NCBI RefSeq assembly: GCF_964204865.1
Contig: NC_135259.1
Coordinates: 6,138,001 to 6,202,000, forward strand
Direction of reading: 5' to 3'
DNA: 64,000 bases
Origin: Styela clava
Taxonomy: Eukaryota
This document shows positions 44,601-55,232 of the stretch, piece after piece. Within the stretch, counting starts at the first letter, position 1. Every line of letters begins with the position of its first letter. The notes under the pieces are model-generated. The model was given only the letters and a program-made list of their open reading frames with translations, was not told the DNA's origin and ran no database searches. A program made the translations under genes and the position numbers.

Positions 44601-47600
44601 CAAGTTCATCCATACACTAGCCACAATTAGCTGATTAGCTTAAAGTCTATTTCCAACCACGAAGACATATATTGACACATCATTCAGCCAACTTTCCTCT
44701 TATATGTTTATATAAAAAACCTGTATTTACGTTATTTTCATTACACCCATGGATTATGGGAATATTTATATTATTACATCTTCGCATTGTATACCGGTAT
44801 ATTTATTGAGCTTTCAAGTTCAATCCCTTGTATTGTAACTTACATTCAATCTAATTCGACTAATCGTAGATCAGTAAATATTGCCCTTCTTTGAAATTGT
44901 CTGAAAATTTATGTTTTTGCACAGAACTTATTACCTCTATAAAGAAGCTGCTGATCTGGAACAAGCTTTAGTACGATATACAATTGATAGATTAAAAGAC
45001 AAAGGTTTTCATATGATTTCGGGATCAAATATTTTGCACGGATCTGCTTATGAGGGGTGTGGAATTACAAGCTCAAAAATGTCAGAGTGAGTATCAAGAG
45101 TTTTGAGTTAACACTTGTATATGGATCAAATGAAAAAGCACATCAATTACTTTATTGAGCTTTTCATGTTATGTAAAAAATCTTTGCCTACACTACACTG
45201 TACATAATTGGTTTTACTTCGATGGAGACTGATCGAACAGTATTAGAACTCAGTATATTGAAAATGTAGGACAGGAATCCTTCGGGGTAAAGCCAGATAC
45301 TGGAAAAATGTACATCACACTTCCAATCTTTTTAAAAACCGACTCCAACACCTGCTCTAAAGGGAGAACCAAATTTTGATCGTAAAATCCTAGTGCTCGT
45401 TAATTGAGCATGCTTTATCAATTTAATGATTTCTTAGTTTTTCTACAAATTTTGACTTTAAAATACCACTATTAGGAATCTAACATTCACATTTCCAACT
45501 GTGCAAAGCGATCAAAGTTCTACCTCGATTACTTGAAATTACAACTCTGGATCTGACTTTAATATAAACCATAACTTGCTTTCTGGCTGAGACAGCTTGC
45601 ATTATTCTCTTGTGAAATAGGCCATAAACATTTCATCAATATACTTTGAATTTTTTGAAAATGATGGATAAACTTTTTCAGTTTGCTGTATCACATAGAT
45701 TCTGAGCAAGAAGATGATTTTTTCATCACTGGAACATCGGAAGTCAGTATAGCTGCATTCTGTGCCAATCATGCAATATTACACAAACATCTACCTTTGA
45801 AACTATGCTGCGTTAGCACATGCAACAGGAAAGAGACAAGTATGAAGATTTGCCACATTTATAAATTTATGGCTTGGTTGTTAATCCAGGGTTATCCAGA
45901 AAAATTAGTTGAATTTTTTTCTATTCAAAGATATATAATCTGAATAACTGTTTTTTAATTCTTTGATTTTCATGTTTTCAGGAAGTAGTATCGATAGACG
46001 AGGAATATATCGGGTTCATCACTTCACAAAGGTAAAAATTTGTTGTCCATGCATCTGAAATAAATAATTGGTCAACTATTTCCATCCATACCTTGTCACT
46101 TGTCAGGTAACATGATTAGGTCGTTCTATTCACTTTCTTCTCCCCTGGGATAAATATAAAATTATCCTATTCTAGGCGCGGCAGTGTGGCTCATCATGCT
46201 AAGCGCTAGGAATATGTCTGCCATCGCATCTCTGAGTACTCTGCTCCCATGCGGGGATAGTTATGTGCAAGAGGATTGCTGGACTCCTCGCGCCGTAGGT
46301 TACGGCTTTTTCCACCCTCAAGTCCAGGCTTCCGAAAACAAACACTAACTAATCCCATACCCGACATGGAATGGTAACAGGACTAGAATCAGTGGTTCGC
46401 CATATGGTTAAGTCGTCTTTCCTCTTTCCCGGGATAAATATGTGAATCCTATCCTATCCCTTCAATCTACCACGTTAATTGGTACCTGTTGCTACTAACA
46501 TATTGCTGCTATTTTCAATTTTATTATGTCTGACATTTTCAAAGGTAGAAATGTTTGCCGTAACAGCTAATGAAACGGAAAAGGAGAGTGAAGAATTGTT
46601 TAACGAATTTTTACAGATTCAAGAAGAAATATTCACGGACTTAGAACTACACTTTAGGTATAACTGAATTTCCCATTTTAGGAAATAGTCATCCGTTGAA
46701 AGAACATATCACAATGTTGTGATCTATATATATATTTTTTTTTATGTAAAGAACTTGATCCAGGCACTTACCGTACTCATTATGCTTAGAAAGACTGGAA
46801 AGTGGTTGTGAATTCGCCATAACCGAAACCTTAGCCCTGGATATGTTTTCGCACACTATTGAGACAACATGCATTTGTATCCTGAAAACGTCGAAAAAAC
46901 TTTTCTTTTAGAATAGTCAATATGGCAACCGAAGAGTTAGGATTACCAGCTCACCAAAAAGTAGATATGGAAGCATGGATGCCAACAAAGAATGGATATG
47001 GCGAGATATCAAGCACATCTAACTGTACAGATTTTCAAAGTCGACGATTACATATTTTATATAAAAACGAAAACGGCAATTACAAATTTGCACACACTGT
47101 AAACGGTACCGCATGTGCTGTGCCTCGTATGATTATTGCTTTACTCGAAAACAACCAGTCAGAGGTGAGTTGAAATGCAACTTATTCAGAACTATATGAA
47201 TATGAAGCACAAGCTAATGAGAAGGGTGTCCGCATATGAAACTCAAATCCTGATGTTCATATTCTATAGCCAGGGTTGCCATCTACTCTGAGCCCAAAAT
47301 AAGCACGGGCGTCAAAATGTTATTTTTCTTAACAACCGCAGAAACGCAGAATAAACATGTGAAGAAGATCATACACGAGTCTCCCACTATTTATCATTAG
47401 AAGTCGCTTCGAACACGATTGTACGCAGCTTCGAAATCGCAAAAAGCTATGGCAAAATATGAAGTCACTGCTGCGCGCAATTTCTAAAGCAGGGGTCGGC
47501 AAGCTTTTGTTGCTCCCGGTCAAAAATCAAGTGTTACAAATCTTGGCGGGCCGTATAGAAAGTTAAAAACTGAACAGGTGACTGATGAACCAAATATTTA

Positions 47601-49260: not shown

Positions 49261-51814
49261 TCATGTCAAAGTCATTGGTACTGAATTAGCGTTATCCGGT
49301 CCATCCCCTCTGACTTGTGAAGATGTTGCAGGGGCCAATGATCTGATTACAAAACCATCATTAATATCCATGTTTCTACCTTCTTTCTCCTGAAAAATGC
49401 AATATATATTTTAATGAAAGCAACAATAAATTTAGCAAGATGTATTTTGATTTTCAGTTATATGGATAGAATGGAATTCTACACTATAAAGATTCATAGT
49501 CTCGTGGTTGTCTGTAAATCTCGCATAACCTTGCTATTATTAAGCAAATTTTCCTTGTGAAGAATTCGAAATGAAAGCTCCTAGTAGTGGATTGTCCATT
49601 TTATGACAAAAATCATTCCACCATGCTAAGGATTGAAACCAGTGGATTAACTCCATGCCATCACAGGAATATAATTTTTTTTATTAATTTTTCAAGATAT
49701 TTGCTCAGAGCAAAGTCATGAAAACTCACCCAGTAATTAAAGATCCCTGAGTGAAGCTACAGACACTATATAGAATTAGTGTGGGTTTGCACATTAGTAA
49801 ATACAGATTGGTGCAAGAATTTATTTAGTGTCCATGTGGCCAGAAAAAAAAACTCCTGGCATATACCGGTAGTTGTTCTTGTGTAAAAAGTGAACTAACC
49901 GACTGTAAACGTGTGAAAATTCAGTTTGGCTGCTGAAAACTTCGTCACAAAGAATGTGTGGAAACATTCTTGGGCTTACTATGGTGTTGTTACTTACCGC
50001 TTTATAATCCAAAAACATTTCTTTGAATGAAATGAAATCTGAAAAACTGAGGAGCATGTCAAAGATATCACCAGTTATCTCATTCTTATGTGCCCTGGAA
50101 AACAAAGTATTAGCAATATTCATGGAATTCGTCACAATAGCAATTTGTAACAATTTCCTATACTTACTGTAACGTTGAGACAAACATTTCCATTGAAAAA
50201 TCAGAAATTCTTTTCTTGAGTTCATCATTCAAACATTTTTCTATTGTGGCAGTCTAAAATACAAATTTTTATAACACAACTGCCAATTATAAACGTGATC
50301 TATGCTGCCGAGTATTGAGAGATATTTATTTGAGCTAAGAACTTCAGTCAGACTGTAGCTGTTTTTAAATTAGTGTCAGAACATTAATTGCAGATTAGCA
50401 AGTACAGTAAGATCAAGGAAAATATGCTCATCTGACTCTGAACACTTCATTAGTTTGAGATTGTGGTGTATAATCTTTTGAATTACAGACTATACAATAG
50501 ATAAATCTGTGGCAAATTGTTTTAATTAACGGGAACTGAATGTACTTAAGGAAAGTACCAGCTACCAGCATTCACTCTTGTTGTGACATCGTCACATTCT
50601 CAGTGTCCCAAATAACTCTCTTCCATTGAAGTTTTGCCATTCCACAGTTGTGTTCATATGCAGACCACAGCTATACAACCTAATGGATGCTTCAAAACCA
50701 TGGAATAAATAATAACTTACATATTCTTTAAATATATCAGTGTAAATAAATTTGTTTTCTTCAGAGTCATCAAATTCCTTATAATATTTTTCCATGAATG
50801 TATCTTGCATATTCTGAAAATCCTCACCTAAATTGAAAAATACGTTTAACGTCATGCTTCGAACTGCTGTAGGGGTTTTTAAAAAAGTATGAAAAACAAC
50901 ACTCAGTGACGATTTTATTTGCGAAACCGCATCATCTGTAGCAGCAGATCAATTCTTCACTATATATATTGGCCAATTTAATTTTATCTTGTGTTGCTAT
51001 TTGAAAAAAAATCTGTCTCTTAAAAATATGAATCTGTCCATCTAATAGCTGGCCAGTATGCTTTTATACTCATATTGGAATCACAAGTTTAGCAACATGG
51101 TTACATTTGCACTCCTGAGGAATAATTATTTGTGAGAGATAGCTGCAGCACAAGGTATGCATCAGAAACAAATAACTGGTAAACTATTCTCATGAACTGG
51201 CAACCGGACGAGAGGCAAGAGCTTTGCCATATAATTAGTCAGGCTTATAGACTTCCCTCTTCGTTGGATATAAATTGAAAGAATTCTTATTTCGCATTAG
51301 TTTTCAAAATTTACACCAACTAATGTATCTCACGGCTTCGCCATAATGGCATCCCAAGAATACTGGAATAGGTTTGTGCTAAACTCCTGAATCTCACCAT
51401 TGGGTATAGCTGATGAAAAGATAGCTAAATGATATGGCGAGTAGGTAATAGACTCTCATATGGTTACCAGTTGTGCATTCCAATTACCATGTCTGCATGT
51501 GAAATACAGTAGGCCAGTTAATACATTACGAAATTTTACAATCGCAAAATGGGATTTAGACTGAGGAGTTTACGGCTAACTAACAACCGCATTGATGGGA
51601 GTCACAGACAGTGTCAAGCCATCCCATGATGCATCTCGTTCTGTCTTGGAATTCAAACTCTCTCGTCAAATGTGTTAAAGAGCAATATCAAAATAGTGGC
51701 TAAAAATATATAATTTATCTCACTAATAATGATATCTTCAATATGCCCAATGATTGAATCGAACTTCAGACTTTCTTTTGATGTGGAAGTGATTTCGTCG
51801 ACATCGATGTCCAT
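49261..51814 (-). CDS. ARL2BP: ADP-ribosylation factor-like 2 binding protein (BART), 5 coding exons, 169 aa
   Basis: Exons 51724-51814 (MDID..FDSIIGHIEDIII), 50721-50827 (FMEKYYKEFDDSEENKFIYTDIFKEY), 50168-50253, 49998-50094 (EITGDIFDMLLSFSDFISFKEMFLDYKA), 49261-49389 (EKEGRNMD..TGA); sum 510 nt. Confidence 0.93.
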
Positions 51815-52190
51815 TTTCTGATTTTATTGTTCTGGAACTCCTCTAAACGGTGTATAGGTATCCTATTAGACTGTTCTGCAAGCGATAAATCTGTAGATCA
51901 ATAACGTTCAATGTTTTCTTTACAAAAATGAAGCCAAAAACGGAACATAAATCTCAAACTTTAAACTGACGACGACAGAATGTTGTTTGTTCCGAAACGA
52001 TGGCAATTTTTCACGCATGAGTAGTTGAGGGTGGATGGAGGGCGTCAAAGTGACTATAGTCATAGTTTACAGAGGACTTGCACGGGTCACGTGACGTTGT
52101 TTACTGGACGGCAATAAAACAAAAACGTCCATGTGGCTCCTGTCAGTTGCAAGTCGAATTATACGTTTCCGTTTTGTTTGGCTATTGAAA

Positions 52191-53175
52191 ATGGTTATTT
52201 CGTATTGTTCCGCTGGCTGTACGTATAGTATAGACAACGAAATGGATCTTCAGTTATATTCCACTGTTTTCAAAAGATCCGGAACGTCGCGCAATGTGGA
52301 TATCATCTATTGGCAGGACTGCTTGGTGTCAAGTCCAGAAGCCATCTCATTTGTGTTTCACTGTTTGCGGACAGCACTACGTTGATGGTGAGTCATGATG
52401 TGCCGTTATCATTTTTTTTAAATATTCATAAGCTCCCTCATTTCAATGAAAAGCAGATGACAAACTACTGTTATTGGTAGGCCTAGGCCAACGACTAACA
52501 TACCGGCCTAGGCGTAGGCCTACTTGCAGACTTGACTCGTGTAAGGTATTAATCAATAATTGCCATAAGGTATTGTTTCCCTAGTTAGCAGGTAATCTAT
52601 TAGTAAGTGTGAAAAGTTGAATGGATAACTAAAGTTTAACGCCAGTGCTAATGCAAAAAATAACCAGAATTCAATTGAATTCTCCATCTAAGAATACGCT
52701 CGCCACCGCATCTCTGATGCCCCTGGGAGTTTTACAGGTTCCAATCCCATGCGGGGGTAGTTATGTGCGGGGGATTGCAGCTCTCCTCCCACTGAGGGTG
52801 GTTCACACGACCGCTGGTCGATTACGACATCCACCACCATCAAGTCCATGCTTCTAAAACAAATAACTGGCTAACTAATCCCGTCATAGAATGGTAATCG
52901 TACGATGTTGCACCTTGCAATCTGTCCCCAACCACAGATAAATTCTATCCTAAAAACTACCCACATTGGTAGGCATAGTTGCGTTTTAAATTGAAAGAAA
53001 TCTTCATTAATGGTCAGAAGGTGTTGTCTGATTGTTTTATTAGTTAGCAGGTAGTTTATTACTGATCTGATACACAAACTTGGCACTGTCAAATGATGAT
53101 TAGTGTTTAATTTATTTTCAGGAAAAAGGGAAGATAACCCATTAACAGCTGCTTATATGTCCCATCAATATTTGA
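52191..53175 (+). pseudogene. Frameshifted THAP zinc-finger (C2CH) gene remnant, two exons
   Basis: Exon 1 52191-52387 read across frameshifts: MVISYCSAGCT..FHCF(P)KDPERRAMWISSIGRTAW..VCGQHYVDG|gtgag; exon 2 from 53122 after ttttcag: GKREDNPLTAAY(fs)VPSIF, matching the THAP AVPTIF box. Confidence 0.8.
52688..52951 (+). mobile_element. SINE copy inside the THAP intron of the foldback element
   Basis: AATACGCTCGCCACCGCATCTCTGA, B-box-like GGTTCCAATCCC, tail GATAAATTCTATCCT; 5' part mirrored at 54234-54331. Confidence 0.75.
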
Positions 53176-54638
53176 ATTTTTCGCCATCTCCAGAGCGGAA
53201 GAGAATTAGTTAGAAAACGGGGGATTTTGAAGAAAGGAAAAAGGCAGGACCATTTCAACAAATTCTGTTAACTTGTATGCGTTGCAATATTACTTTGCAG
53301 TTGTTAGCATAAACATTTATTGTGTCTTTCGACTAGACCTACCACACTTTAAAAGAAGCCGCCTACACCCCTTTTCACTAGAACCATAATACTGTAAAAT
53401 ATTCGATAGAAATTACCCCCGAGGCATCATATCTTCCATTTAAAATGGCTGTGGAGGCAGATATATTTTTTACTCTAACCAGGTTATCTTATCCTTGCTT
53501 ATAGATATCTTGAGGTTAGTGACTCCAACTGACCCATGCATGCCACACTGCAAATTCTCTTGTATACCGATAAAATTAGGCTGTTGGAGCTTTCAGACCT
53601 TGAAAACAGTAAAATCTGAGCACGATGGATTCATGTGAAACAGGTAATATGCATTTATAGGCAAAAATATCCCATCCTGAGCAGTACCGATCCACAACCT
53701 CCTGCCTCTGGAATCAAAACATTAGACAAATTGGTGTACTGTGCGCATTCACAAATCTTTGCGAATCAAGTGTGCCTTTTGACTAAAGAAAATTTAGCAT
53801 TGCAATCTCAATATCAACCTAGTATCTGCAGATAAAACCAATTGTTTTTTAAAAATACATTTTTGATGTGCTTTATTTTTCAAATATGATTTATAATTAC
53901 TGTAAAGTGTGTGATACATTTGGTACCATGAATATCATTTGCAAATTAGCTTGGGTTACACCCCTCTCATATAAAAGTTTAGACTCTTATGTCATATCTC
54001 ATAATATTCTTTAAACAAAAGGTTGCGGCTAGCCGGCTATCCATCAGAATTTTCTTTCAGATCACAAAGTCGCAATATTACGTCTTGCTAAGTTTCATTG
54101 GCAACTGTATCTGGTTGTAGTATCGGTGTCCAACTTGGTGACTGAAACCTTCACTACCAGACCCACCTAAACAATTTTTTTTCTTGATGGGGTCGTCTTG
54201 AAGTTGCTTTCGTTAAAGCACAATGGACACTTTAGAGCTGCAATCCTCTCGCACATAACTATCCCCGCATGGGATTGAAACCTGTGAAACTACCAGGGTG
54301 ATCAGAGATACGGTGGCGAGCGTATTCCTAGATGGCGAATTCAATTGAATTCTGATTATTTTTTGCATGACCACTGGTGTTAAACTTTAGTTATCTATTC
54401 AACCTTTCACACTTAGTAATAGATTACCTGCCAATTAGGGAAACAATACCTTGTAGCAATTCATTATTAATTCCTTACTGTCTTACACAAGTCAAGTCTG
54501 CAACTGCAAGTAGGCCCACGCGCCACGCCTAGGCCTACTAATAACAGTAGTTTGTCATCTGCTTTCCATTGAAATGATGGATCTTGTGAATATTTAAAGA
54601 ATTTGATAACGGCACACTATCACCACATTATCACTCAC

Positions 54639-54842
54639 CATCAACGAAGTGCTGTCCGCAAACAGTGAAACACAAGTGAGATGGCTTCTCGACTTGACAC
54701 CAAGCAGTTCTGCCAATAGGCAATAGATGATATCCACATTGCGCGACGTTCCGGATCTTTTGAAATCAGTGGAATATAACTGAAGATCCATTTCGTTGTC
54801 TATACTATACGTACAGCCAACGGAACAATACGAAATAACCAT
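54639..54842 (-). pseudogene. Inverted second copy of THAP exon 1 in the right arm
   Basis: MVISYCSVGCT..KDPERRAMWISSI..VCGQHFVDG|gtgag. Confidence 0.8.
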
Positions 54843-55232
54843 TTTCAACAGCCAAACAAAACGGAAACATATAATCCGACTTGCAGCTGACAGGAGCCAA
54901 ATGGACGTTTTTGTTTTATTGCCGTCCAGTAACAAAGGCACGTGACCCGTGCAAGTCCTCTATAGTCACTTTGGAGGGCGTATTCGCCGAGATTTCAGGA
55001 CTAAAATTGATATTTTAGGATCCTAAAATTGATATTTTAGGTTCGAGATTTTTACTTAACAGTACCAGGATTTTATCAAATTTGGAAAGAAATACACTCA
55101 TAAAATGGAAAATTTGAGGAGAACAAACATCTATTTTTGTCACATTGAAGCGTAAGTAGATGTAGCCTACATCAGAGACAGTGTGATGGACAACTTGGTG
55201 TTGACGGTCACTGATGAGCAAGTCCGGCCGCA

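What the first reader, a model, noticed from the sequence alone, without database searches (positions are those of the whole stretch)
52046..54973. Foldback transposon whose ~740-bp inverted arms each carry an inward-facing THAP exon
Seen: exact 8-bp TSD (GAGGGCGT), CA..TG termini, ~740-bp imperfect arms, and in each arm an ATG-initiated, frameshifted THAP exon ending at a GTGAG donor. Only the left copy continues to exon 2 (YVPSIF box). Known: THAP is the DNA-binding domain of P-element transposases, P elements make 8-bp TSDs, and Galileo is a P-superfamily element with long foldback TIRs. Inference: a non-autonomous P/Galileo-like family built from two copies of the 5' end, which puts two transposase promoters facing each other. 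It could yield long hairpin or dsRNA (a small-RNA source against the family) or promote rearrangements.
Basis: partly seen in the sequence, partly recalled or inferred. Interest (0 to 1): 0.8.

Follow-up and report, generated by a model that had tools for sequence, protein, structure and literature searches.

The report
Transposon sitting in another's excision scar
A dead, hairpin-shaped jumping gene from a common family lies exactly inside the small scar left by a different jumping gene, so it looks like a P element although its own family moves in another way.

Summary
Window 52046-54973 has two inverted arms of about 730 bp, an exact 8-bp direct repeat (GAGGGCGT), CA..TG tips, a frameshifted THAP first exon in each arm, and a YVPSIF exon-2 relic after the left arm only.

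The P/Galileo reading does not hold for the family.
- The genome carries at least 458 ends of this family.
- All 30 other complete-ended copies end at (T/A)AT|AGAGGAC and have no 8-bp duplication.
- The resident intact ISL2EU element (THAP-HTH-DDE plus YqaJ) ends the same way (AAT|AGACC).
- One paralogous empty site shows a net gain of 4 nt.

The 8-bp repeat and the CAAAGTGAC tips match a second family, Y.
- Y has 329 tips.
- At 94 loci its excision left P-type scars. All 20 examined carry 8-bp repeats and keep 11-18 nt per side, one of them 17+17.
- The 22-bp palindromic scar occurs at 20 loci. Here the THAP element sits in the central TATA of such a scar.

Both arms share the same frameshifts and a SINE piece, and they diverged before the family amplified. 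No autonomous partner was found.

Tips occur at three loci, far more than chance allows. A composite moved by the P-type enzyme therefore stays open.

First readers of this scan noted other copies on other pieces (s1-817542, s1-808007).

The parts
52038..52045 (.). left copy of the 8-bp direct repeat GAGGGCGT
   Evidence: The same kind of 8-bp repeat flanks 20 of 20 Y-family scars examined.
52046..52057 (+). outer tip CAAAGTGACTAT: the left half of a P-type (family Y) scar or shell, whose last two letters AT serve as the ISL2EU-type target
   Evidence: Identical to the first 12-13 nt of 329 Y ends and of 94 scar loci. Absent from 28 of 28 other family loci first examined.
52058..52070 (+). 13-nt filler at the left junction, absent from the right end and from other copies
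   Evidence: Alignment of the two ends. It lies exactly at the family's own end. It is also present in the RNA-like contig that lacks the element.
52071..52785 (+). left arm (long inverted repeat), starting at the family end AGAGGACTTGCACGGGTCACGTG
   Evidence: It is 93-95% identical to left arms of 14 other loci but 86% to its own right arm.
52191..52387 (+). dead THAP exon 1, left arm; GT donor at 52388-52389
52689..52903 (.). SINE-like repeat in the former intron 1. Its first part belongs to both arms. Coordinates are approximate.
   Evidence: Positions 630-844 and 2572-2753 of the full-length copy match unrelated loci L044, L046, L047 and L088 at 75-85%. Read depth is 2-3 times higher in these bins. 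ARAGORN found no tRNA.
53122..53209 (+). exon 2 relic with YVPSIF at 53156-53173, the C-terminal box of THAP. An in-frame stop lies upstream in this copy.
   Evidence: It is open for 50 aa in copy L034. No Pfam hit on its own.
54234..54235 (.). point of a 457-bp deletion relative to full-length family copies
   Evidence: our 1-2189 and 2190-2928 match L034 with 457 bp between them.
54236..54961 (-). right arm, ending ...GTCCTCT
54639..54842 (-). dead THAP exon 1, right arm, with the same frameshifts plus a 7-bp duplication
54962..54973 (+). outer tip ATAGTCACTTTG: the right half of the scar or shell
54974..54981 (.). right copy of GAGGGCGT
51724..51813 (-). context: first coding exon of an ARL2BP/BART-like gene. 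The element lies about 230 bp upstream of its ATG, inside sequence that an RNA-like contig carries.
   Evidence: Sequence; BART domain on the next two exons; contig of run X5.

Best explanation
Window 52071-54961 is one internally deleted copy of an abundant non-autonomous DNA transposon family. A full copy is about 3.36 kb.

Origin of the arms (inferred). A full copy has two arms of about 0.8 kb, 86% alike. They arose before the family spread, by an inverted duplication of the 5' end of an already broken THAP-bearing transposase gene. That 5' end comprised the end sequence, the leader, THAP exon 1 and part of intron 1 holding a SINE.

How the family moves.
- Shown: the anatomy of the ends. 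The family ends at AGAGGAC...GTCCTCT next to AT, usually inside TATA.
- Inferred: it moves by cut and paste with an enzyme supplied in trans, in the manner of ISL2EU elements (PHIS superfamily), whose transposases carry an N-terminal THAP domain and duplicate AT.

This copy (inferred from anatomy). It lies in the central T|AT|A of a 22-bp palindrome, CAAAGTGAC TATA GTCACTTTG, flanked by an 8-bp duplication. That palindrome is the recurrent scar left when an unrelated P-type family (Y) excises with a staggered cut of about 17 nt and the two tips are rejoined through their palindromic TATA. The 8-bp duplication and the CA..TG tips therefore record an earlier Y visit, not the insertion of the THAP element.

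Later events. The left junction was broken and rejoined with 13 nt of filler. Another haplotype, or its cDNA, lacks 52078-54970.
For: Family and layout:
- 1517 first-look candidates for the arm. The left arm is 93-95% identical to other left arms and 86% to its own right arm.
- 458 ends with at most 1 mismatch; 300 exact.
- The full layout is seen in L031-L036.
- Left-type arms form a clade with 100/99 support.
- None of 36 distinct exon-1 copies is open from ATG to donor, and left and right types share the early frameshifts.

Ends of the family:
- In 28 of 28 other loci homology stops at (T/A)ATAGAGG and the flanks are unrelated.
- In 30 of 30 pairs of ends there is no abutting direct repeat of 3 nt or more. 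The flanking base is T in 29 of 30 on one side and A in 29 of 30 on the other.
- A paralogous empty site (L023 against L031/L033) reads TATATA where the filled site has TATATA-GAGG..CCTC-TATA. The net gain is 4 nt. This fits an AT duplication with ends AGAGG/CCTCT, and excludes a Tc1-like TA duplication and blunt capture.

ISL2EU comparison:
- The resident intact ISL2EU (L046) has a 511-aa THAP-HTH-DDE frame plus a YqaJ frame and a TIR of about 305 bp.
- AT precedes AGACC in 95 of 100 listed ends, and AAT in 90 of 100.
- Print: ISL2EU has a THAP N-terminus and a 2-bp AT duplication with a conserved base on each side (PMC4122938 and PMC4482050, passages read).
- The THAP piece scores 28.5 bits against the L046 THAP and 16.9 bits against the resident P-like THAP.

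The shell (family Y):
- 329 Y tips, with controls of 0 and 4.
- 94 scar loci, control 3.
- 20 of 20 scars examined (17 distinct) carry 8-bp direct repeats: 11 exact, 9 with one mismatch.
- Scars keep 11-18 nt per side, one of them 17+17.
- The 22-bp palindrome occurs at 6 loci exactly and at 14 with one mismatch.
- Print: P elements have an 8-bp duplication and a 17-nt staggered cut (PMC7776569, passages read).
Against: - Tip-bearing family ends occur at 3 loci. With about 229 insertions and about 500 Y-tip TATA sites among about 3.5 million TATA sites, three or more hits have P of about 5.5e-6. Independent chance insertions into scars are therefore not credible. Either targeting or joint mobility is needed, and neither is shown.
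- Typical copies show no palindromic flank preference: 3.37 against 3.35 matches of 12.
- Y subfamily L088 has GAGGACA 8 nt further in than the family's GAGGACT. This could mean that the two end sequences are related. The similarity beyond the first 13 nt is not significant against shuffles (22 against 17.9, sd 2.4).
- No autonomous partner with these ends was found, so no DDE or YqaJ gene ties the family to ISL2EU.
- TATA is a palindrome, so AT, TATA and no duplication cannot be separated by flanks alone. Only one clean paralogous empty site was found.
- The allele lacking the element is not the clean shell that this reading predicts as the ancestral state. It looks like a later deletion, or like a reverse-transcriptase skip.
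Confidence: 0.6

Rival explanations
1. Composite element with two sets of ends. Once a THAP-family copy had landed in a Y scar, the two abutted Y tips (11-13 nt each) again enclosed cargo. The P-type Y enzyme then moved the whole as a unit and made new 8-bp duplications. The inner ISL2EU-type ends stayed usable and kept seeding ordinary copies. GAGGGCGT would then be the duplication made by the composite itself.
For: - Three loci carry the tip with unrelated outer flanks, far above chance.
- Y subfamilies that share only the first ~15 nt are each multi-copy, and the one full copy examined has 7 of 8 bases duplicated. A short tip may therefore suffice.
- The tip-bearing copies sit at basal to middle positions of the left-arm tree, with ordinary copies among them. 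This is what one expects if composites seed ordinary copies.
Against: - Only this locus shows both ends, so no second composite with its own 8-bp duplication is documented.
- Drosophila P elements need internal transposase-binding sites as well as the inverted repeats (PMC7776569, figure legend read).
- The AU test rejects one clade for the three copies (p 8.5e-7). That fits this model only if ordinary copies descend from composites.
Confidence: 0.22
2. The family is a P/Galileo-like foldback element whose true ends are CAAAGTGACTATAGAGGAC... with 8-bp duplications, and the hundreds of copies that start at TATAGAGG are truncated by-products.
For: - An 8-bp duplication and CA..TG tips are present here.
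- There is a THAP exon.
- The tip is shared with a P-type family group.
- The best distant THAP match (P0001, E 8.7e-7) ends in a stretch that I recognise from memory as the start of a P-type transposase. Pfam did not call it.
- In Y the 17-nt cut lies 4 nt before GAGGAC. The same spacing in this family falls exactly where ordinary copies begin (my inference).
Against: - At least 454 of 458 ends lack the tip, and 30 of 30 pairs lack any 8-bp duplication.
- A P-type integration would still make one.
- The paralogous empty site holds TATATA and the net gain is 4 nt, which does not fit blunt capture.
- The ends mirror the resident ISL2EU.
- There is no P-type coding remnant inside the element: tblastn with the 822-aa resident protein gives E of 4 or more.
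Confidence: 0.1
3. The long arms are the natural giant inverted repeats of an ISL2EU lineage in which both convergent genes (transposase and nuclease) begin with a THAP exon inside the repeats. Other first readers of this scan proposed this. On this view the family is a simple internal-deletion derivative, not an inverted duplication.
For: - Both arms keep the ATG and a GT donor.
- A frame of about 100 aa on the right-hand side, downstream of the right exon 1, stays open in many copies.
- The resident ISL2EU has long TIRs of about 305 bp.
- Notes s1-817542 and s1-808007 propose it (not checked beyond this).
Against: - Both arms share the same early frameshifts and the same SINE piece, which points to copying of an already dead end.
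- In the intact resident ISL2EU the THAP lies outside the TIR.
- The right-hand frame has no Pfam match and no match in the ISL2EU loci.
Confidence: 0.07
4. Assembly artefact (false inversion or collapse).
For: None found.
Against: The same layout appears at many loci. The arms are 14% diverged and each is closer to its own type elsewhere. Contigs of X1 match both junctions without a difference.
Confidence: 0.01

Closest known systems
ISL2EU elements (PHIS superfamily of DNA transposons)
   Same: - N-terminal THAP domain in the transposase.
- AT next to both ends, with a preferred base on either side.
- Long inverted repeats.
- Ends starting AGA, as in the intact ISL2EU of this genome (PMC4122938 and PMC4482050, passages read).
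   Different: - No DDE_Tnp_4 transposase or YqaJ gene in any copy examined, and no autonomous partner found.
- The preferred outer base is T..A here, against A..T in print and in the resident element.
- The arms are about 0.8 kb, against 6-259 bp reported in PMC4482050 and about 305 bp in the resident element. They include a whole first exon, intron sequence and a SINE.
P element and Galileo (P superfamily)
   Same: The THAP domain, an 8-bp duplication and CA..TG tips at this one locus. Galileo also has long foldback-like inverted repeats (abstracts of PMC3573991 and PMC3688188; passages of PMC4168063).
   Different: - The family as a whole lacks the tips and the 7-8-bp duplication.
- There is no P-type coding remnant.
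- The resident autonomous P-like element (5.4 kb, 822-aa frame, duplication GTTTGTGG) has other ends and a more distant THAP.
P-element excision footprints
   Same: The outer shell here equals a class of scars in this genome: an 8-bp duplication kept on both sides, up to 17-18 nt of each inverted repeat left behind, one scar being 17+17. This matches the 17-nt staggered cut of P transposase (PMC7776569, passage read).
   Different: The scars are inferred from sequence in an animal far from Drosophila. The enzyme of family Y was not identified. The typical make-up of Drosophila footprints is recalled, not read.
Drosophila Foldback (FB) elements
   Same: Two long inverted arms around a short middle.
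   Different: FB arms are built of tandem subrepeats (recalled). The arms here hold no internal tandem repeats and derive from a gene's 5' end.

Membership tests
P superfamily (P element, Galileo, 1360) | 7-8-bp target site duplication at the ends shared by the family | tested here: not met
   It is met at this locus only. 0 of 30 other pairs of ends have any abutting repeat of 3 nt or more.
P superfamily (P element, Galileo, 1360) | terminal inverted repeats common to the copies of the family | tested here: not met
   The CAAAGTGAC tip occurs on 4 ends at 3 loci, against 458 family ends.
P superfamily (P element, Galileo, 1360) | THAP DNA-binding domain at the N-terminus of the transposase | tested here: met
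   Pfam THAP gives 22.4 bits here (under the cut-off) and 25.8 bits in copy L034. The exon is broken in all 36 distinct copies. ISL2EU shares this feature.
P superfamily (P element, Galileo, 1360) | P-type transposase core (Tnp_P_element and the RNase H-like domain with its GTP-binding insertion) | tested here: not met
   No remnant in the element. None of the 5 long pairs of ends examined holds one. Such genes exist elsewhere in the genome with other ends.
ISL2EU (PHIS superfamily) | AT next to both ends, with a conserved base outside it | tested here: met
   30 of 30 pairs have AT next to AGAGG/CCTCT. The outer base is T in 29 of 30 and A in 29 of 30. The resident ISL2EU has AT in 95 of 100 and AAT in 90 of 100 listed ends.
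ISL2EU (PHIS superfamily) | the AT is a true 2-bp duplication of the target | tested here: inconclusive
   One clean paralogous empty site fits AT, TATA or no duplication, and rejects TA-plus-TAGAGG and blunt capture. A second site fits AT. A third attempt was uninformative.
ISL2EU (PHIS superfamily) | transposase with THAP, HTH and DDE (DDE_Tnp_4) domains | tested here: not met
   Only the THAP relic is present. No DDE was found in family copies, and no autonomous partner. The family is non-autonomous, so this bears on proof of membership, not on the mode of movement.
ISL2EU (PHIS superfamily) | second gene with a YqaJ exonuclease domain | tested here: not met
   It was not seen in family copies: no frame over 108 aa in the full copy, and the one conserved frame has no Pfam match. 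It is present in resident ISL2EU loci L046 and L047.
Family Y of this genome (P-type, outer shell only) | tip CAAAGTGACTATA in inverted pair, flanked by an 8-bp duplication | tested here: met
Foldback (FB) elements | arms made of tandem subrepeats | tested here: not met
   No tandem families within the arms. The defining feature itself is recalled.

The most novel reading that the evidence does not exclude
A P-type excision scar is an empty transposon shell that can be re-armed. When an ISL2EU-type element lands in the central TATA of the 22-bp scar, the two abutted 11-13-nt tips again enclose cargo, and the P-type enzyme moves the composite with fresh 8-bp duplications. The inner ends meanwhile keep seeding ordinary copies. 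One DNA would thus be mobile under two unrelated transposase superfamilies. This would also explain why tips occur at three loci scattered through the family tree.
Probability: 0.2. Interest if true: 0.6.

Novelty: new member of a known kind. Interest (0 to 1): 0.35.

Why it matters
- Classification caution. One nested copy carried every textbook mark of a P-like element (8-bp duplication, CA..TG tips, THAP), yet its family behaves like ISL2EU. Classifying a transposon from a single copy can be wrong when it sits in another element's scar.
- Natural scars. This genome holds a large set of P-type scars (94 loci, one of them 17+17 nt). These suggest that the unusual 17-nt staggered cut of P transposase is conserved in a P-type family of this animal genome, far from Drosophila.
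- Testable question. Three scar-embedded copies are far too many for chance. This makes the choice between targeting to the scar and re-mobilisation of a re-filled shell directly testable.
- Local effect. The element lies about 230 bp upstream of the ATG of an ARL2BP-like gene, in sequence carried by an RNA-like contig. It appears absent from, or skipped in, that RNA, so it may be a polymorphism with an effect on that gene.

Tried and rejected
Search for an autonomous partner:
- Five pairs of family ends 4.7-8.4 kb apart were examined. They hold unrelated inserts, one of them a gypsy-like retroelement, or partial duplications.
- A protein search with exon 2 gave 310 candidates and 150 scored, with a longest open frame of 99 aa.
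- A cluster on C16 is an older truncated copy inside segmental duplications.
- A family arm lies 600 bp from an ISL2EU gene pair in L047, but it points away from it, and no inverted repeat spans the pair.

THAP relatives:
- phmmer of the 53-aa THAP piece against 1.84 billion proteins gave 2 hits. Both are multi-THAP proteins and do not decide the superfamily.

Alternative modes of insertion:
- A Tc1/mariner-like TA duplication and blunt end-joining capture of excised fragments were both considered. Both were rejected on the paralogous empty site.
- The capture idea was attractive because ordinary copies begin exactly 4 nt before GAGGAC, the spacing of the inner cut in Y.

Other checks:
- Homology of the family ends to Y beyond the first 13 nt is not significant against shuffles.
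- Typical flanks show no palindromic preference, and no Y tips lie near ordinary copies in 255 kb of loci.
- A further empty site was sought through the L029 flank. That flank is the very end of another high-copy element, so it was uninformative.
- ARAGORN found no tRNA in the SINE-like part.
- Exons were searched one by one.
- Supplementary files were not opened. The target-site logos of PMC4482050 (its Additional file 2) may bear on how unusual T|AT|A is among ISL2EU families.
Full report
**1. What is at the coordinates**

Window 52046-54973 holds two inverted arms.
- The repeat finder gives six blocks of 82-97% complementarity plus a perfect 14-nt terminal pair.
- The pairwise alignment runs from the tips to about 52785 / 54236.
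- GAGGGCGT stands directly outside both tips, and the repeat does not extend to a ninth base.

Each arm has an ATG-started exon followed by GTGAGT.
- The Cys-x3-Cys part and the FSKDPERRAMW...CGQH(Y/F)VDG part lie in different frames.
- The right arm has a further 7-bp duplication.
- The open C-terminal piece hits Pfam THAP at 22.4 bits, under the 23.9 cut-off. The same piece of copy L034 passes at 25.8 bits.

After the left arm only, an AG acceptor precedes a YVPSIF box, the C-terminal THAP motif.

**2. The family**

- The left arm has 1517 first-look candidates in the window's own 377-Mb assembly. Of the 40 scored, 14 other loci are 93-95% identical, while this copy's own right arm is 86%.
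- A 24-nt end motif occurs 458 times with at most one mismatch.
- Full copies (L031-L036) read: left arm, about 1450 bp, 457 bp that this copy lacks (deletion at window 54234/54235), right arm. That is about 3.36 kb, with arms of about 0.8 kb.
- Left-type arms form a clade with 100/99 support. The two arms had therefore diverged before the family spread.
- None of 36 distinct exon-1 copies is open. There is no indel between the arms over the first ~110 nt of the exon, so the early frameshifts are shared.
- The inner part of both arms is a piece of a SINE-like repeat that also occurs at unrelated loci. This confirms note s1-813425.

**3. The family's own ends are not those of this copy**

- In 28 of 28 other loci, homology stops at (T/A)ATAGAGGAC and the flanks are unrelated.
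- For 30 pairs of ends (10 from long loci, 20 fetched as short stretches), no direct repeat of 3-9 nt abuts the ends. The base outside ATAG is T in 29 of 30, and the base outside CTAT is A in 29 of 30.
- The tip CAAAGTGAC joined to TATAGAGG occurs at three loci only: here on both ends, at C8:9214848 (L037) and at C14:17153161 (L038). Their outer flanks are unrelated, and the other ends of L037 and L038 are lost.

**4. What kind of movement the ordinary ends point to**

TATA is a palindrome, so flanks alone cannot separate AT, TATA and no duplication.

Empty sites:
- For copy L023, two paralogues of its flank read CATTG-TATATA-TGCTC. The filled site reads CATTG-TATATA-GAGG...CCTC-TATA-TGCTC. 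The net gain is 4 nt beyond GAGG...CCTC.
- This fits an AT duplication with ends AGAGG/CCTCT, a TATA duplication, or a duplication-free TAGAGG element.
- It does not fit a Tc1-like TA duplication or blunt capture of TATAGAGG.
- A second paralogue (L036 against L044) has AT at the site.

Comparison with the resident ISL2EU:
- The genome holds an intact ISL2EU element (L046) with a 511-aa THAP-HTH-DDE frame, a convergent YqaJ frame, and copies 95-99% identical.
- Its TIR is about 305 bp and starts AGACCTTATTC.
- In the 100 listed of its 160 ends, AT precedes AGACC in 95 and AAT in 90.
- This is the pattern in print for ISL2EU: a THAP N-terminus and a 2-bp AT duplication with a conserved base on each side (PMC4122938 and PMC4482050, passages read).
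- The family here reads (T/A)AT|AGAGGAC.
- Its THAP piece aligns better with the L046 THAP (28.5 bits) than with the resident P-like THAP (16.9 bits).

I therefore read the family as ISL2EU-like. Proof by a transposase gene is missing.

**5. Where the 8-bp repeat and the tips come from**

- CAAAGTGACTATAAC occurs 329 times, with controls of 0 and 4. It is the shared tip of several subfamilies, here called Y.
- One complete copy (L088, 3875 bp, non-coding) has a perfect 28-bp TIR and a 7-of-8 duplication.
- At 94 loci (control 3) the two tips stand almost back to back.
- Of 20 such loci fetched (17 distinct), all carry 8-bp direct repeats: 11 exact, 9 with one mismatch.
- They keep 11-18 nt of each TIR, and one keeps exactly 17+17.
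- Two more turned up by chance, at L044 2358-2402 and L037 4446-4474.
- An 8-bp duplication and a 17-nt staggered cut are the hallmarks of P transposase (PMC7776569, passages read). These loci are excision scars of a P-type family.
- The 22-bp perfect palindrome CAAAGTGAC-TATA-GTCACTTTG is a recurrent class, with 6 exact loci and 14 with one mismatch. I infer that it forms when the two overhangs pair through their palindromic TATA.

This locus is that palindrome with its 8-bp repeat, and the THAP element sits in the central T|AT|A.

**6. The problem that remains**

- About 229 insertions fall among about 3.5 million TATA sites. Three or more hits in the roughly 500 TATA sites that lie in Y tips have P of about 5.5e-6.
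- Ordinary copies show no palindromic flank preference, and none has a Y tip nearby in 255 kb of loci.
- The AU test rejects one clade for the three tip-bearing copies (p 8.5e-7; for this copy with L037, p 0.009).

Two readings remain:
- The enzyme is drawn to this scar. The family's own end holds GTCACGTGAC, which resembles the GTGAC..GTCAC of the scar.
- The re-filled shell is itself moved by the P-type enzyme and keeps seeding ordinary copies from its inner ends.

I cannot decide between them. An empty allele at this locus would.

**7. History of this copy and its setting**

- The left junction carries 13 nt of filler exactly at the family's end. Part of the filler resembles sequence 30 nt further in. 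I take it as the mark of a break and rejoining at that end.
- The element lies about 230 bp upstream of the ATG of an ARL2BP/BART-like gene on the minus strand.
- Run X1 looks like the assembled individual. Its contigs match both junction flanks without a difference and stop in the repeat.
- Run X5 is guessed to be RNA from its size. A 1563-nt contig covers 51719-52077 and continues at 54971-55205, with five differences in the flank. The joint has no splice signals and shares TTG on both sides.
- That contig is either a haplotype with a 2.9-kb deletion or a reverse-transcriptase skip over the hairpin.
- The RNA-like runs hold about the share of words that the flanks alone would give.
- Nothing here shows hairpin RNA or small RNAs.
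- Depth in X1 is about 1000 times higher on the arms than on the flanks. The tool warns that this is not a copy number.

**8. Other readings weighed**

- A P-like family with truncated by-products is unlikely on the counts above. The resident autonomous P-like element (5.4 kb, 822-aa frame, duplication GTTTGTGG, at least 7 long copies at 96-99%) has other ends.
- The idea of other first readers (s1-817542, s1-808007) is that giant arms natively supply a THAP first exon to two convergent genes. The shared frameshifts and SINE weaken it. A frame of about 100 aa that stays open on the right-hand side keeps it alive.
- Note s1-822915 names the genome as Styela clava. I did not check that.

**9. 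Verdict**

This is an ordinary kind of object, a non-autonomous ISL2EU-like transposon with unusually long arms derived from a gene's 5' end. It sits in an instructive place, inside the scar of a P-type element. The P/Galileo label rests on features that belong to the scar. The side findings are the large set of natural P-type scars and the excess of scar-embedded copies. They are the more interesting part.

Noticed in passing
G000 loci listed; L044:2358-2402; L037:4446-4474; L088 (C4:9633623-9637497): Family group Y has 329 ends that share the tip CAAAGTGACTATAAC. At 94 loci the two tips stand nearly back to back, flanked by 8-bp repeats and keeping 11-18 nt per side (one 17+17). These are natural P-type excision scars. 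Many of the duplications begin GT or end AC, like the GTANTAC reported for Galileo (PMC4168063, passage read). The enzyme of Y was not found.
   Followed up: partly
L044:2250-2677 and more than 25 other G000 loci: A ~425-bp repeat carrying one such scar (duplication GCTTCAAC) is present in many copies at 93-100% identity. The host repeat therefore amplified after the scar was made. This inflates the count of the commonest scar type.
   Followed up: partly
L044:3347-8716 (C13:4850846-4856215) and copies on C6, C9, C10, C2, C3 and C8: A 5.4-kb P-like element with an open 822-aa frame, a split THAP upstream, an 8-bp duplication GTTTGTGG and very short inverted ends (CACTGA / CACAGA). At least 7 long copies are 96-99% identical, so it was probably active recently.
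   Followed up: partly
L046 (C9:5582500-5592400); copies on C4, C2 and C6: An intact ISL2EU element with a 511-aa THAP-HTH-DDE frame, a convergent 306-aa YqaJ frame and a TIR of about 305 bp. A derived short family contributes to 160 ends in all, nearly all preceded by AAT.
   Followed up: partly
window 51719-52077 joined to 54971-55205 (run X5): An RNA-like contig lacks 52078-54970, has no splice signals at the joint and shares TTG on both sides. It is either a deletion haplotype or a reverse-transcriptase skip across the 0.7-kb stem.
   Followed up: partly
window 49821-50228 (-), 50592-50855 (-), about 51724-51813 (-); 46922-47173 (+): Exons of an ARL2BP/BART-like gene lie on the minus strand just left of the element. 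A class II (seryl-type) tRNA synthetase exon lies further left on the plus strand.
   Followed up: partly
C2:13274640-13274663 (L056): Two family ends abut head to head with a single TATA between them (AAGTCCTgTATAGAGGACT). This is either an insertion into another copy's terminal TATA or a joined-ends form.
   Followed up: no
L042:3441-8130 (C2:15574514-15579203): A gypsy-like LTR retroelement with a 1132-aa open gag-pol frame is nested in the right arm of a family copy. It was only observed.
   Followed up: no
C16:13.85-14.34 Mb; L045: At least six copies of an older, truncated family member (78% at exon 2) are spaced through a block of segmental duplications.
   Followed up: partly
C1:23390837-23410896: Nine Y tips, all in the same orientation, lie within 20 kb. 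This is possibly a tandem array built from a Y element.
   Followed up: no
window 55001-55044: Two tandem 22-nt units (CTAAAATTGATATTTTAGGATC), each partly palindromic, lie just right of the element.
   Followed up: no
L034:2952-3275 (+), i.e. the right-hand inner part of full family copies; truncated in the window at about 54140-54244: A frame of about 100 aa with Cys pairs stays open in many copies, on the strand of the right-arm THAP exon. It has no Pfam match and no match in the ISL2EU loci.
   Followed up: partly
L029:266-425 and about 1000 first-look candidates: The flank of one family copy is the very end of another high-copy element, which occurs as inverted pairs about 3 kb apart.
   Followed up: no
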